Part shown: one piece after another, positions 3,101-6,576 of the stretch
Numbering within the stretch: the stretch's first letter is position 1
How the letters are laid out: every line of letters begins with the position of its first letter
Assembly: GCF_036588685.1 (NCBI RefSeq)
Contig: NC_086375.1
Location: 4,464,001 to 4,528,000 of the forward strand
Origin: Mytilus trossulus
Taxonomy: Eukaryota
Direction: 5' to 3'
Length of the DNA stretch: 64,000 nt
Notes under the pieces: model-generated
Told to the model about the DNA's origin: nothing
The model's input: the letters and a program-made list of their open reading frames with translations, nothing else
The model's database searches: none
Position numbers and translations under genes: made by a program

Positions 3101-6100
3101 GAGGACATTGTTTCTGTAGAAGTCAGACATGTCTGGCCTGATGTGAGTATCTTACATAAAGTGGGAAAATCTTGTAAGGTGTTTATGTTCCTGAATATTT
3201 TCAAAAAGTAAAATTTCTCTTCACATAAATTTGATATTTGTGGAAGTTTATAACTAAGGACAAAATTTGTCAGAAAAAATTAAACCTGCTAAAATAAACC
3301 GCTATACAGTTAGAAATCGTTTGTTTTAAACTAATTTTTACAATATTTAGGAAAATTAGAAATGAAAGTTGAATAGAAAACTTTGTTACTAATTTTTCTA
3401 CATTGTAGCTTCTATTGACCTTTTTACTTTATTTGGTGGCGAAAACAACATCTCAATGCAAAATTGTAGAAACTAAAAAGAATTAAACCATCCGTGTCAA
3501 CAATTTTTTTACAAAAACAAAACTCAGTTATATTTTTTCTTATATTCCAGGGTTACAAAAATCTACAGGGAACCAGTAATGCTGCCAGAAAAGTTATTGA
3601 TAGCATGCAATACATTGCTGATTCAGTTACCAGTGTCAGTCAGAAACCAACTAAAATGATTTCTGATTGGATGACAGACCAGATAGCTCCTGACTACTGG
3701 GTTCCTAATTCACAGATAACAGTAAGTACTGACATTTTACTATTGAGTTTGGTCAACTGTGTTGTGTTGTCAATACGATATTTTATTTAAATACAAATTA
3801 AGTTTATAAGTATATTTTATTATTTTTCTGTGAACCCCTGCATCCGCACACGATCCACCTTAGCTGTCCTGCGTTGTAGTTACAACCGTCAGCCTCATGT
3901 CTACCGACCAGTTCCATTCTACCACCAACCTCACTGAAGAAACCGCCCATACCTCGAAGAAAAGAAAAACCTGCGACGAAGATATGGAGGATAATACAAC
4001 CGCACCCGCTCCTACTACGATAACCATCCAAGAGAAAAACTTAGCCCACTTTAGAACCTTACGGAAATTGAACATTAAATTCATCCGCAGGTAGAACCAC
4101 CTACAATACCTCGAACACATCTACCAAGATTTACAATTCCCAGAATTGCGGCGATCATACACTTCACCTTTTACTAATTCAATGGAAGCAGTACCTCCCT
4201 CGGAGGGAAGCCAGTTGAATTGGTACGGGATGGCCAATGGGGTGTTGTCCAATTTGGAAATGAACTGACATTTTATGAGCCACTTCCATCATTTCTACAA
4301 TATTACCAATAGAAACTTAACTTTTATTCTTGCTACATTATAAACACTATTTTACATTTTCACTTTCACTTTTATTCTTTCACGTCATGATTAATACAAC
4401 GGCATTATATACACTTTATGAACATGTAAACTCTGTTATATTGTCCTGATGACGCCGCATTAGCGGCGAAACATGTCGACTCAATAAAACTATCACCTTG
4501 CGGTAACCTAGATGTTGTTGTCTCTACATATTATATTTCCATGAGGTTTTAAGACAACCGCAGCATACTTCGGTATCCATCTTGGTTACTCTACCAGCTT
4601 TTCCGTTAGAAGGTGTTGGTTCACTCGTCACATATTATAAGTATATTGGTAAAAAGTGTCATGTCTTTTCTTTTTGAGATTAACCCAAGAATCTTAATAG
4701 AACTGTGATAGACCAGACATCCTCTGATTTTATATGAAAACCTCCTTTATGCAAGTAGAGTAATTTTTCATTCATATAGAACAAATCAAACTTTCATTAA
4801 ATATAATTTTTAGACTGATTACGAGTGTGTGATTACGGATTGTTAATGACAAAAGATATTCTTTTATTTTTCAGAATTGTAAAAAATGTCAGAAGGAACT
4901 TGATAATGAACAGAAGCATCACTGCCGTGCATGTGGTGAAGGATTTTGTGATGACTGCTCATCAAAGAAACGACTAATACCAGAGAGAGGCTGGAATTTC
5001 CTTGTTCGTGTATGTGATGATTGTTACAGTTTAGAAAACTCAACAGGTGAGTAATAATCCTCCCTTTTAAATTAACAGAATGTTATCAGTTTTGCATTAT
5101 TTTCATTATTTTTTATGGAACACCGTTTTTTTTCTGGATTTTGTGGGTGAACTAGTTTTTATGTTTAAAGATGTACAACTTATATAAAGGATCGTATGCA
5201 AACCTTTTTAAGAACACAATTTTTCGATATCCATGAAAAACTGGTATCAACTCAATGTTATGAATCTATGTTAATATAACATCAACTGAAAACAGATATT
5301 AAATTTTTAACAAATTAGAATGTGATTTGGTGTTTGAATAATTGTGATTTTAAATGCAGTAAGAAATGAAATTAATTTTAATGACATCATTTTCCAGAAA
5401 TCCCTGGTGGAAGGGAGCCACAAGTTACTGCCAGAAAAGTTGGTGAGGTGCTGTCATCTGCTATCAGTGTTGTTGGTTCTACTGTAATCTATCCAGTAGG
5501 TAAGTTGGTGAGGTGCTGTCGTCTGCTATCAGTGTTGTTGGTTCTACTGTAATCTATCCAGTGGGTAAGTTGATGAGGTGCTGTCATCTGCCATCAGTGT
5601 TATTGATTCTACTGTAACCTATCCAGTGGGTAAGTTGGTGAGATGCTGTCATCTGCTATCAGTGTTTTTGGTTTGACTGTAACCTATCCAGTGGGTAAGT
5701 TGGTGAGGTGCTGTCGTCTGCCATCAGTGTTATTGATTCTACTGTAACCTATCCAGTTGGTAAGGTGCTGTCGTCTGCTATCAGTGTTGTTGGTTCTACT
5801 GTAACCTATCCAGTGGGTAAGTTGATAAGGTGCTGTCGTCTGCTATCAGTGTTGTTGGTTCGACTGTAACCTATCCAGTTGGTAAATTGATGAGGGGATG
5901 TCATCTGCCATCATTAGTGTTGTTGTTCTACTGTAACCAATCCATTGGATAAGATCACTGTTATCAGGTCTGGAGAAAAATCTATGATAGGGTTTCCTTA
6001 CATTTGATTCTGGTATAACCTTCAAGTGTTCTTAAGACTATATTTAGACAGCCAAAAATGTACAGTTTCTGAGTGTATTCATTTAGAAACTTTAGCAATT

Positions 6101-6576
6101 GTTGGATAAAATGTTAAAATTCAAGTTTTCATTTTTGAGACACCTATCTTCGTCTTGTCTCAAATTTGTGTACAATAATAAAAACATCACAATTGTATAT
6201 CTTAAAAAAACAACCTATCACCAAAACCAATATTTTCTTGTCTACAATATGAATTCAAAGCTGTAGTTTAACAGCTATCTGTTTTCCCTCTATTCTTTTA
6301 TTCACATATTGTAAAATGATGAAGAGTATGTTTTTCATTGCAGGTATGTTAAAGGATTCAGCTAGACCAACCTACTGGACTCCAGATGAACATATTACTA
6401 AATGCTGTGTTTGTGAAACACCATTTGGACCTAAATTGAAAATACACCATTGTCGAGCTTGTGGAGAGGGTGTGTGCCATGATTGCTCACCAGACAAACG
6501 TCCTGTTCCTCTCAGAGGATGGGATTATCCTGTCAGAGTGTGTCAGAAATGCTTTCAGAAGAAAGATAAAGTGTAA
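110..6576 (+). CDS. ZFYVE1: Zinc finger FYVE domain-containing protein 1 (DFCP1), 3' part; 5' exons lie upstream of the window
   Basis: Phase-consistent GT-AG exons 110-207, 913-1021, 2523-2620, 3028-3142, 3551-3721, 4875-5046, 5398-5499 and 6344-6576 (TAA). The translation includes FPDQIFSCPVRCLSC, VVPKTSESTDNVWMGLAKYVWTG, CPKCGVIYRSRERWYGN and WMTDQIAPDYWVPNSQI, plus two C-terminal FYVE fingers (KHHCRACGEGFCDDCS; IHHCRACGEGVCHDCS...VRVCQKC). This is the DFCP1 architecture. Confidence 0.95.
1084..2066 (+). mobile_element. 5'-truncated retroelement (Penelope-like RT C-terminus plus 3' UTR) in a ZFYVE1 intron
   Basis: Stop-free frame 1086-1418 without an ATG (LCITEKLLHQGFRYHKLVKTFTKFYHRYKDIIRKY...LIKKGYNY...RRN*), resembling the PLE RT thumb motif KLLxQG[FY]xxxKL. 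Candidate TSD ATGCTT at 1078-1083 and 2067-2072. Its 3' end is repeated elsewhere in the window. Confidence 0.7.
2783..2964. mobile_element. MITE; a related copy in opposite orientation lies at about 29040-29227
   Basis: Imperfect TIRs AATTCACCATTTCCGAATCTAA / TTAGATTCTGAAATGGCCAATT. Internal sequence (GGGTAATATTTTCAAAAGTGTACACC) recurs reverse-complemented near 29170-29200. Confidence 0.55.
3817..4634 (+). mobile_element. Internally deleted Penelope-like / retrozyme-like insertion in a ZFYVE1 intron
   Basis: GC-richer island flanked by a 13-bp direct repeat TTATAAGTATATT (3804-3816, 4635-4647). It contains a short ORF (3897-4094), a decayed RREAS*IG motif resembling the GIY-YIG C-terminal RExxWI, a hammerhead core and AATAAA. 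Confidence 0.75.
4438..4486 (+). ncRNA. Minimal type I hammerhead ribozyme
   Basis: Stem I TATTGTC / GAC(TC)AATA; core CTGATGA 4446-4452; one extra C; stem II GCCGC-ATTA-GCGGC; GAAA 4468-4471; palindromic ACATGT in place of stem III; predicted cleavage after GUC at 4477. Confidence 0.85.
5437..5953 (+). repeat. 65-bp minisatellite (about 8 copies) made of the exon 3' end plus the 5' splice site of ZFYVE1
   Basis: Unit AAGTTGGTGAGGTGCTGTCATCTGCTATCAGTGTTGTTGGTTCTACTGTAATCTATCCAGTAGGT starts at 5437, 5502, 5567, 5632, 5697, 5762 (shortened), 5819 and 5884. Confidence 0.95.

What the first reader, a model, noticed from the sequence alone, without database searches (positions are those of the whole stretch)
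3817..4634. Hammerhead-ribozyme-bearing Penelope-derived insert, in sense orientation inside a ZFYVE1 intron
Seen: an 818-bp island with a perfect 13-bp TSD. It contains CTGATGA-C-GCCGC(ATTA)GCGGC-GAAA-CATG-TC|GAC, with stem I closing on both sides and AATAAA 5 nt after the predicted cut. Established: minimal type I hammerheads with a palindromic stem III (here ACAUGU, implying dimeric folding) mark Penelope-like element pLTRs and retrozymes, and an extra nucleotide between A9 and G10.1 is tolerated. Inference: this is a young non-autonomous PLE derivative that keeps the ORF start and a decayed GIY-YIG end but lacks RT. Because it is on the host sense strand, it puts a self-cleavage site and a poly(A) signal into the ZFYVE1 pre-mRNA just upstream of the FYVE-finger exons.
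Basis: partly seen in the sequence, partly recalled or inferred. Interest (0 to 1): 0.8.

Follow-up and report, generated by a model that had tools for sequence, protein, structure and literature searches.

The report
Hammerhead-bearing Penelope-type retroelement in intron
This is a real, recently inserted and still polymorphic copy of a small parasitic retroelement that carries a minimal hammerhead ribozyme motif; the kind is already known from mussels and other animals, and nothing suggests that it cuts the host gene's RNA.

Summary
Observation confirmed. Window 3817-4634 is an 818-bp insert between two perfect copies of TTATAAGTATATT. It lies in sense orientation in the 1153-nt intron that splits the first of two C-terminal FYVE fingers.

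The genome holds at least 85 BLAST pieces of the same family (92-98% identical). Other copies show the Penelope-like (PLE) footprint: 5'-truncated partial tandems, inverted truncated arms, an optional 97-bp tail, and 6-13 bp target duplications.

The motif at 4446-4480 has every feature published for PLE minimal hammerheads: the catalytic boxes, a G10.1-C11.1 pair, an extra base after A9, and a palindromic ACAUGU. It recurs 78-214 times in the genome against 0 for the reversed pattern, with compensatory helix II variants. Rfam's Hammerhead_1 model does not detect it.

Not supported:
- The "ORF start plus decayed GIY-YIG end" reading. The family has its own orphan frame of about 125 codons, broken here by a TAG. 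It shows no similarity to any RT or endonuclease.
- Any effect on the host pre-mRNA. This is one solo minimal motif, a type with no detectable activity as a monomer in vitro, and no RNA reads cover it.

DNA contigs show both filled and insert-free alleles. No autonomous partner was found. The scan has noted hammerhead retrozymes and PLEs elsewhere in this genome. Verdict: new family of a known kind.

The parts
3804..3816 (+). Left copy of the target-site duplication TTATAAGTATATT
   Evidence: the 13-mer occurs exactly twice in the window, here and at 4635.
3817..4634 (+). Solo single-unit copy (818 bp) of a non-autonomous Penelope-type hammerhead element family
   Evidence: at least 85 BLAST pieces in the genome, 92-98% identical; other copies form partial tandems and inverted arms flanked by duplications.
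3897..4091 (+). N-terminal 65 codons of the family's small frame (MSTDQ...KFIRR)
   Evidence: No Pfam hit.
4092..4094 (+). In-frame TAG that breaks the frame in this copy; several other copies read through here
4095..4268 (+). C-terminal 57 codons plus the stop of the family frame (…NWYGMANGVLSNLEMN*)
   Evidence: No similarity to GIY-YIG.
4113..4318 (+). 206-bp module shared at 95-98% identity with a second, otherwise diverged element family ('family 2')
   Evidence: The RNA reads of run X24 that lie here carry family-2 flanks.
4435..4445 (+). 5' strand of hammerhead helix I (GUUAUAUUGUC). T4437 is specific to this copy and adds a pair.
4446..4477 (+). Minimal type I hammerhead core: CUGAUGA, extra C4453, helix II GCCGC/GCGGC with loop AUUA, GAAA, palindromic ACAUGU, C17. 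The predicted cut is between 4477 and 4478.
   Evidence: The features match PMC4209133. No Rfam hit.
4478..4490 (+). 3' strand of helix I (GAC, UC bulge, AAUAAAAC). It contains AATAAA at 4483-4488, a hexamer kept in most related families.
4524..4537 (+). Internal CTACATATTATAT(T): the alternative fixed 3' terminus used by many other copies (element position about 719-721)
4538..4634 (+). 97-bp 'tail' that is present only in copies or arms ending at element position 818. It also ends in ACATA(TTAT).
   Evidence: For the tail concept see PMC8557442.
4635..4647 (+). Right copy of the target-site duplication. Its first 4 nt (TTAT) are ambiguous with the element's own continuation.
3551..3721 (+). 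Host exon ending ...DYWVPNSQIT (start of the first FYVE finger). The GT donor is at 3722.
   Evidence: open 57-codon frame.
4875..5046 (+). Host exon NCKKCQKE...HHCRACG...RVC (rest of the first FYVE finger)
   Evidence: Pfam FYVE, E = 5.3e-15; matches to solved FYVE domains.

Best explanation
Window 3817-4634 is a solo, one-unit copy of a low-copy, non-autonomous retroelement family. The family is copied by the reverse transcriptase and GIY-YIG endonuclease of a Penelope-like element supplied in trans, which makes it a large, retrozyme-like PLE dependant.

Shown: it is an insertion with a 9-13 bp target duplication. It has many 92-98% identical relatives. Those relatives carry the PLE-specific insertion footprint, and the family carries a conserved minimal type I hammerhead motif about 160 nt from its 3' end. 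Insert-free alleles exist.

Inferred: multimeric or circular family transcripts are the template for target-primed reverse transcription. Priming occurs at one of two ACATATTAT sites, which gives the termini at element positions about 721 and 818. The hammerhead works, if at all, as a dimer between two motifs of a multimeric transcript, to process that transcript.

In this intronic copy the single motif, the broken frame of about 125 codons and the AATAAA hexamer are most likely inert passengers that are spliced out with the intron.
For: - Insert and duplication.
- Family size and identity.
- Architecture of other copies: [x-818][4-721] partial tandems, inverted 5'-truncated arms, one end at position 721 and the other at 818, and 6-13 bp duplications around whole composites. 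This matches the PLE description in PMC8557442.
- The tandem junction (4638 back to 3820) is present in DNA contigs of three organism labels.
- Hammerhead: 78 and 214 genomic matches against 0 for the reversed controls. There are at least six helix II variants. Pair 28-36 of the alignment reads AU 10, GC 8, UA 2, GU 2, and 95.7% of cells are paired against 19-51% when the partner columns are slid. The base after A9 is C, U, A or G.
- All four emergent features listed for PLE minimal hammerheads in PMC4209133 are present.
- No RT or endonuclease: longest related frames are 180 aa or less, and there are no Pfam hits.
- Polymorphism: run X1 holds a 326-nt contig with the exact right junction and another contig that bridges 3750 to 4862 with only 261 nt between. 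Run X7 bridges 3792 to 4782 with 164 nt between. An empty site would give 280 and 158 nt.
- The genome holds many PLEs with long open frames. One is a canonical PLE whose hammerhead Rfam recognises at 28.1 bits.
Against: - No autonomous PLE that shares the 3' end, hammerhead sequence or protein with this family was found. The PLE link therefore rests on architecture and motif type.
- Rfam Hammerhead_1 gives no match even at E<=10 on 76 nt.
- The unit (818-1133 bp) is 2-5 times larger than published animal retrozymes.
- The window copy itself shows none of the tandem or inverted features.
- The letters of the insert-free alleles could not be read, so a single intact TTATAAGTATATT there is inferred from lengths only.
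- No RNA evidence for cleavage, circles or expression of this family.
Confidence: 0.8

Rival explanations
1. One reading: because the copy is in sense orientation, its hammerhead cleaves the ZFYVE1-like pre-mRNA at 4477/4478 and/or its AATAAA causes premature polyadenylation. Transcripts from the filled allele would then lose both FYVE fingers.
For: The orientation and position are right. The core is intact and identical to the family majority, and T4437 even adds a helix I pair. AATAAA is the only such hexamer in this intron. A 2026 preprint reports that retrozymes are depleted from introns, which hints at a cost (abstract only).
Against: Only one motif lies in the window, and the nearest listed family copy is about 770 kb away, so no dimer can form in cis. 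A single PLE minimal hammerhead showed no detectable cleavage in vitro, and dimers only low activity (PMC4209133). The lowest-energy fold (-17 kcal/mol) sequesters core bases, against -9 for the hammerhead helices I and II. AATAAA occurs 96 times on this strand in 64 kb. No RNA reads, ends or joints were seen at the site, but host-gene coverage in that run was near zero, so this last point is weak.
Confidence: 0.05
2. The element is an internal-deletion derivative of an autonomous PLE that retains the start of the RT-EN ORF and a decayed GIY-YIG C-terminus.
For: N- and C-terminal parts lie in one frame. Non-autonomous retroelements often keep the ends of their parent. A longer 1133-bp variant exists.
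Against: No Pfam hit at E<=10. Six-frame genome searches with both halves find only short frames of 180 aa or less and no RT-bearing locus. BLASTP against the endonuclease C-termini of two canonical PLEs gives no alignment at E<=100. The only database relative is a fragment of family 2. The extra segments of the 1133-bp variant are family-2-like, not RT.
Confidence: 0.07
3. The hammerhead-like string is a fortuitous or non-catalytic conserved sequence, for example a binding or packaging hairpin next to a poly(A) signal, and the element is moved by a non-PLE machinery.
For: No Rfam match. Helix I is weak and AU-rich. Helix III cannot form within one molecule. The AAUAAA is conserved, and one copy has AUUAAA instead, which suggests that the 3' strand of helix I may be kept for another reason.
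Against: All 11 core positions plus G10.1-C11.1 are invariant or nearly so across families that are otherwise only about 77% alike or unalignable. Helix II covaries. The extra base and the palindrome are the published signature of PLE hammerheads. The insertion architecture is PLE-specific.
Confidence: 0.05

Closest known systems
Minimal hammerhead ribozymes (min-HHRs) in the pseudo-LTRs of Penelope-like elements (Cervera & De la Pena 2014, PMC4209133)
   Same: Type I topology. CUGANGA/GAAA/UH core. An unpaired base between A9 and G10.1. A conserved G10.1-C11.1 pair. Short helix I. No real helix III, only a palindrome (ACAUGU) that implies dimeric folding. Consensus families with compensatory changes. 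Location in the part of the element that is repeated in partial tandems.
   Different: Helix II here is 4-6 bp rather than 7-8. The motif sits in a family without an RT. AAUAAA is built into the 3' strand of helix I. Activity is untested.
Animal non-LTR retrozymes (Cervera & De la Pena 2020, PMC7229834; Li, Clavereau & Pollet 2026 preprint, 10.64898/2026.07.22.740005)
   Same: Non-autonomous and AT-rich. One type I hammerhead per unit. Head-to-tail multimers. Target duplications longer than 4 bp. Proposed dependence on PLEs. Already described in mussels.
   Different: The unit is 818-1133 bp against 170-400 bp. Copy number is low (tens to about a hundred, against thousands). The hammerhead is the minimal rather than the canonical type. 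The unit carries a frame of about 125 codons. Insertions are usually 2 units or fewer, with inverted arms, rather than long arrays. No circRNA evidence was obtained.
Autonomous Penelope-like elements (Penelope/Poseidon, Neptune and Naiad clades; Craig et al. 2021, PMC8557442)
   Same: Insertion footprint: 5' truncation, partial tandems that form pseudo-LTRs, an adjacent inverted 5'-truncated copy, a tail at one end, and variable target duplications.
   Different: No RT or GIY-YIG domain. The tail is 97 bp rather than 30-40 bp. No sequence similarity was detected to the PLEs sampled from this genome.

Membership tests
Hammerhead ribozyme, minimal type I variant of PLEs | Catalytic boxes C3-U4-G5-A6-N7-G8-A9, G12-A13-A14, A15.1-U16.1 and cleavage-site H17 | tested here: met
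   CUGAUGA at 4446-4452, GAAA at 4468-4471, U4476, C4477. Invariant in 23 aligned variants. The invariance is partly imposed by the search patterns.
Hammerhead ribozyme, minimal type I variant of PLEs | Helix II closed by G10.1-C11.1 and supported by compensatory changes | tested here: met
   G-C in 18 of 23 variants and G-U in 5. The fourth pair reads AU, GC, UA or GU. Further variants are GCCUGC/GCAGGC, GCCGAU/AUCGGC and GCCUAU/AUAGGU.
Hammerhead ribozyme, minimal type I variant of PLEs | [quoted passage not shown] | tested here: met
   C4453 in the window; C, U, A or G in relatives. Named as a signature in PMC4209133.
Hammerhead ribozyme, minimal type I variant of PLEs | Palindromic positions 15.x-16.x, so that helix III forms only in a dimer | tested here: met
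   ACAUGU at 4471-4476. No variation was available to test it, because my pattern required it.
Hammerhead ribozyme, minimal type I variant of PLEs | Helix I closes around the cleavage site | tested here: met
   GUC/GAC, a UC bulge, then UAUU/AAUA. The helix is weak and AU-rich. The bulge length differs between families (2-3 nt), so covariation could not be counted.
Hammerhead ribozyme (Rfam RF00163 Hammerhead_1) | Match to the curated covariance model | tested here: not met
   No match at the gathering score on 64 kb, nor at E<=10 on 1051 nt or on 76 nt. Positive control: a canonical PLE hammerhead of the same genome scores 28.1 bits, E = 2.8e-5, still below the gathering score of 34.
Hammerhead ribozyme | Site-specific self-cleavage | not testable with these tools
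   The RNA run X24 has no reads over 4431-4479 and no piled-up ends.
Autonomous Penelope-like element | ORF encoding an RT and a GIY-YIG endonuclease | tested here: not met
   The longest frame is 65 + 57 codons. No Pfam hit. No similarity to PLE endonucleases.
Non-autonomous PLE-mobilised element | PLE insertion footprint: partial tandems, inverted 5'-truncated arm, tail at one end, and target duplication around the whole composite | tested here: met
   Seen in at least 12 family loci. The window copy itself is a simple solo unit with a duplication.
Non-autonomous PLE-mobilised element | 3' end or hammerhead shared with an autonomous PLE of the same genome | tested here: inconclusive
   Five PLE loci were sampled (L060-L064) and regions upstream of three hammerhead variants were inspected (L059, L078, L079). 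None matched. Only 150 of 615 GIY-YIG candidates were scored.
Animal non-LTR retrozyme | [quoted passage not shown] | tested here: not met
   The unit is 818-1133 bp with a minimal hammerhead. There are no reads on the motif in 1.8 billion letters of one RNA run. The circRNA part was not really testable.
ZFYVE1 (DFCP1) host gene | Two tandem C-terminal FYVE fingers | tested here: met
   FYVE at E = 5.3e-15 for exon 4875-5045. A second HHCRACG finger lies in a + strand reading frame running from about 6325 to a stop at about 6600 (motif at 6445). Exons were searched one at a time. Orthology of the N-terminal parts was not tested.

The most novel reading that the evidence does not exclude
The family is more than a passive hammerhead carrier. 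The 206-bp module at 4113-4318 is kept at 95-98% identity between families whose other parts are about 77% alike or unalignable, and it overlaps the end of a frame of about 125 codons with pooled pN/pS near 0.47. The module may be either a cis-acting RNA signal recognised by the mobilising PLE reverse transcriptase or part of a small element-encoded protein. The second case would make this a protein-coding retrozyme-like element, which has not been described.
Probability: 0.12. Interest if true: 0.5.

Novelty: new member of a known kind. Interest (0 to 1): 0.25.

Why it matters
The result adds a well-delimited example to the known link between Penelope-like elements and hammerhead-bearing non-autonomous repeats. 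This family has a large unit (818-1133 bp) and low copy number. Its insertions show two alternative fixed 3' termini, both at an ACATATTAT motif, with the hammerhead upstream of both. That footprint bears on how PLE reverse transcription starts, and it shows that the template RNA must run past the ribozyme site.

The copy is also a ready-made natural experiment. It is a presence/absence polymorphism of a sense-strand minimal hammerhead plus AATAAA inside a conserved gene, so heterozygous animals could show directly whether such motifs do anything to a host transcript.

Otherwise the finding is ordinary for this genome, which the scan has already found to be full of such elements.

Tried and rejected
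- Rfam: three searches gave no hammerhead hit for the window motif. I do not treat this as refutation, because the model penalises the extra base, the 3-bp palindrome and the bulged helix I. A canonical PLE hammerhead from the same genome served as a working control.
- Autonomous partner. I tried six-frame genome searches with both ORF halves and with the 157-nt 3' region. I ran a Pfam GIY-YIG search of the genome. I inspected two Naiads (L060, L062) and three canonical PLEs (L061, L063, L064). I also inspected 3.5 kb upstream of three other hammerhead variants. No partner was found.
- Protein identity: Pfam found nothing. The word-indexed protein search found one fragment of the sister family. 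The ESM Atlas was unavailable.
- Coding test: pooled pairwise pN/pS is 0.47 over 51 codons and 15 versions. The pairs are not independent and the number of events is small, so this is inconclusive. About 3 of 10 full-length copies keep the frame open, which is no more than neutral decay predicts.
- Haplotig with the empty site in the assembly: none.
- Dimer energy: the intended dimeric hammerhead structure could not be scored, because its pairs cross in the concatenated form. Only the unconstrained dimer lowest-energy fold was obtained (-38.5 against 2 x -17 kcal/mol).
- RNA evidence: the reads of run X24 on the element belong to family 2, as their loose ends match L032. None lie on the hammerhead.
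- Earlier scan notes: a look-up by sequence was blank.
Full report
WHAT IS THERE. TTATAAGTATATT occurs at 3804-3816 and at 4635-4647 and nowhere else on either strand of the window. The 818 bp between the two copies (3817-4634) differ in composition from the surrounding AT-rich intron. The window contains no N. The motif reads CUGAUGA (4446-4452), an extra C (4453), GCCGC-AUUA-GCGGC (4454-4467), GAAA (4468-4471) and CAUGUC (4472-4477), followed by GAC (4478-4480) and AATAAA at 4483-4488. A scan of both strands of the 64-kb window for a hammerhead core followed by a helix II of 4 bp or more and GAAA finds this site only.

HOST CONTEXT. The exon at 3551-3721 ends ...DYWVPNSQIT and is followed by a GT donor. 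The exon at 4875-5046 begins NCKKCQKE...HHCRACG...RVC and matches Pfam FYVE at E = 5.3e-15, as well as solved FYVE domains. A second HHCRACG finger lies in a + strand reading frame that runs from about 6325 to a stop codon at about 6600, with the motif itself at 6445. The gene therefore has two tandem C-terminal FYVE fingers, as ZFYVE1/DFCP1 does, and the element lies in sense orientation in the 1153-nt intron that splits the first finger. Without the insert that intron would be about 322 nt. I searched the exons one at a time and built no joined model. Orthology to ZFYVE1 beyond this architecture was not tested.

IT IS A MEMBER OF A REPEAT FAMILY WITH A PENELOPE-TYPE FOOTPRINT. A BLAST search of the window's own 1.3-Gb genome gave 85 matching pieces at 92-98% identity. 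The 3' 157 nt alone gave 41 pieces, mostly at 97-99%. I mapped the pieces locus by locus and saw four things.
- Many copies are 5'-truncated at variable points.
- There are two alternative fixed 3' ends, at element positions about 719-721 (window 4535-4537) and 816-818 (window 4634).
- There are head-to-tail partial tandems of the form [x-818][4-721].
- There are composites in which an inverted, 5'-truncated arm ending at 818 abuts a forward arm ending at 721 (L002, L005, L008, L011, L012, L030).

Duplications of 6-13 bp flank the whole composites, for example GTATGTAAGAA, AATCATTATAA, AGTTTAACATTG and TAAATAAATGTTT. Partial tandems that form pseudo-LTRs, an adjacent inverted truncated copy and a 'tail' at one end are exactly what Craig et al. 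2021 describe as characteristic of PLE insertions and not of LINE-type insertions (PMC8557442). Here the tail is the 97 bp at 4538-4634.

Both termini end in ACATATTAT. In tandems the junction reads ...CACATA-TTAT-TTATTTTT, so the first four bases of the window's right-hand duplication are ambiguous with the element. The window copy is the simplest form: one complete unit ending at 818. A 1133-bp variant of the unit carries two extra segments related to a second family.

THE HAMMERHEAD MOTIF. The pattern CTGANGA-N(10-24)-GAAACATGTCGAC occurs 78 times in the genome, against 0 for the reversed control. CTGANGA-N-GCC-N(5-14)-GGCGAAAC occurs 214 times against 0. The core boxes are constant across these hits. 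Helix II varies in a compensatory way: GCCGC/GCGGC (this family), GCCA/UGGC (family 2), GCCGAU/AUCGGC, GCCUAU/AUAGGU and GCCUGC/GCAGGC. The base after A9 is C, U, A or G.

On an alignment of 23 distinct variants, 95.7% of cells form standard pairs, against 19-51% when the 3' partners are slid by 1-3 columns. The fourth helix II pair reads AU 10, GC 8, UA 2 and GU 2. Helices I (inner 3 bp) and III do not vary. For helix III my own search pattern imposed this.

[quoted passage not shown] All four are present here.

Against membership, Rfam's Hammerhead_1 model gives no match at the gathering score, nor at E<=10 on 1 kb or on 76 nt. The same model scores 28.1 bits on the hammerhead that lies 1.1 kb downstream of a canonical GIY-YIG ORF in this genome (L064). 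The extra base, the 3-bp palindrome and the bulged helix I are all penalised by that model. I file the motif as a PLE-type minimal hammerhead by its published descriptor features, not by the covariance model.

WHAT THE ELEMENT ENCODES. The N-terminal 65 codons (3897-4091) and the C-terminal 57 codons (4095-4265) lie in one frame, separated by a TAG at 4092-4094. A few other copies read through and give a frame of about 125 codons. That product has no Pfam match at E<=10. Its only relative among 5.8 billion proteins is a fragment of family 2. Six-frame searches of the genome find relatives only in frames of 180 aa or less. It has no BLASTP similarity to the endonuclease C-termini of two canonical PLEs of this genome.

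Pooled pairwise pN/pS over the last 51 codons is about 0.47, which is suggestive at most. The 206 bp at 4113-4318 are 95-98% identical between this family and family 2, although the hammerhead regions of the two families are only about 77% alike and their 5' parts are unrelated. This points to recent exchange between families or to strong constraint on that module.

AUTONOMOUS PARTNER. The genome has hundreds of GIY-YIG matches, many in open frames of 900-1056 aa. Those sampled were Naiads with an N-terminal endonuclease (L060, L062), or canonical PLEs with no similar hammerhead or 3' end (L061, L063, L064). The 3.5 kb upstream of three other hammerhead variants held no RT. The partner remains unidentified, so the PLE link rests on architecture and motif type.

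READS. In DNA run X1 a 326-nt contig covers 4609-4934 without a mismatch, which is the filled right junction, at depth 17. Another contig, at depth 21, joins 3750 to 4862 with only 261 letters between. In run X7, under a different organism label, a 2029-nt contig joins 3792 to 4782 with 164 letters between. A precise empty site would give 280 and 158 letters. Small indels are frequent in this intron in the same table, and neither gap can hold an 818-bp insert. The insertion is therefore polymorphic or lineage-specific. The letters of the short alleles were not shown, so the single target site is inferred.

The tandem junction (4638 back to 3820) appears in contigs of all three organism labels, so the family is shared among them. 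The assembly itself has no second haplotype of the locus.

The one RNA run laid (X24, random-primed, 1.8 billion letters read) placed 46 reads. Almost all lie on 4113-4318, and their loose ends match family 2 (L032). None lie on 4431-4479, and no piled-up ends were seen. The host exons had nearly no coverage, so this run says nothing about effects on the host transcript.

HOW IT MOST LIKELY WORKS.
- Shown: this is a retro-type insertion with a target duplication, from a family with the PLE footprint and a conserved minimal hammerhead.
- Inferred: more-than-unit-length or circular family RNA is reverse-transcribed at a nick made by a PLE endonuclease, starting at one of two ACATATTAT sites. Both sites lie downstream of the ribozyme site (element position 661/662), so the template must be uncleaved at its last hammerhead or religated. 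Second-strand events would create the inverted arm.
- Inferred: the hammerhead can reach an active fold only by pairing its ACAUGU with a second motif. In the host intron there is just one motif. The predicted fold of the monomer (-17 kcal/mol) pairs the extra C with G12 and sequesters core bases, against -9 kcal/mol for hammerhead helices I and II. A single minimal hammerhead from a PLE gave no detectable cleavage in vitro.
- AATAAA occurs 96 times on this strand of the window.

I therefore judge the copy an inert intronic passenger (about 0.8).

COMPARISON AND NOVELTY. Minimal hammerheads in PLE pseudo-LTRs (2014), hammerhead retrozymes in mussels (2020) and the derivation of animal retrozymes from PLEs (2026 preprint) are all published. 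Notes from this scan report hammerhead retrozymes and PLEs on other pieces of the same genome. I treated those notes as leads only. What is particular here is the family, not the kind: a unit of 818-1133 bp, tens rather than thousands of copies, an orphan frame of about 125 codons, AAUAAA embedded in helix I, two alternative ACATATTAT termini, and a segregating sense-strand intronic copy. The class is 'new member of a known kind' and the interest is low to moderate.

Noticed in passing
L031 7496-8012 (minus strand); L032 7012-7856; about 20 further loci: A sister family ('family 2') shares the 206-bp module (window 4113-4318) at 95-98% identity. It has an unrelated 5' part, a frame of 136-169 codons, and a hammerhead with N7 = A and helix II GCCA/UGGC. 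RNA reads of run X24 with family-2 flanks show that it is transcribed.
   Followed up: partly
G000 C3:2093564, 2094443, 2095322; C4:31073366-31075838; C7:6020013-6020923: Another hammerhead family (CUGAUGA-A-GCCUGC..GCAGGC-GAAAC) lies in head-to-tail arrays with a period of about 880 bp, often with an inverted arm. It looks like a further large retrozyme-like family.
   Followed up: no
G000 C10:30946589 and 30950866; C45:94529 and 98805; C9:66826679 and 66830955; L060, L062: Naiad-type PLEs (N-terminal GIY-YIG followed by RT) have uninterrupted 1056-aa frames and occur as tandem pairs about 4276 bp apart. This suggests recent activity.
   Followed up: partly
L064 217-260 (minus strand): A canonical PLE (C-terminal GIY-YIG) carries a standard minimal hammerhead (CUGAUGAG...GAAACGCGCGUC) 1.1 kb downstream of its stop codon. 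Rfam Hammerhead_1 scores it at 28.1 bits, below the gathering score of 34.
   Followed up: partly
L033 6291-7985 (G000 C12:16361290-16362984): A 1133-bp variant of the unit has extra segments of about 160 and 194 bp at element positions 274/297 and 468/501. The segments resemble family 2, which implies mosaic evolution by template switching or recombination between families.
   Followed up: partly
window 4483-4488 and the aligned columns of alignment A1: AAUAAA 3-6 nt after the predicted cleavage site is kept in nearly all families. One copy has AUUAAA, which breaks a helix I pair but is still a poly(A) hexamer. The copies carry no poly(A) tails.
   Followed up: no
window 3996 (table 4); L002 and L003 frames: A 6- or 12-nt in-frame length polymorphism lies in the Ala/Pro/Thr-rich part of the family frame (…TTAPAPTT… against …TTATAPAPTT… and …TTAPATAPAPTT…).
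   Followed up: no
window 4823-4871 (table 3): The intron flank of the insert-free allele in run X7 differs at about 12 of 50 positions from the window haplotype. Haplotype or species divergence in this intron is very high.
   Followed up: no
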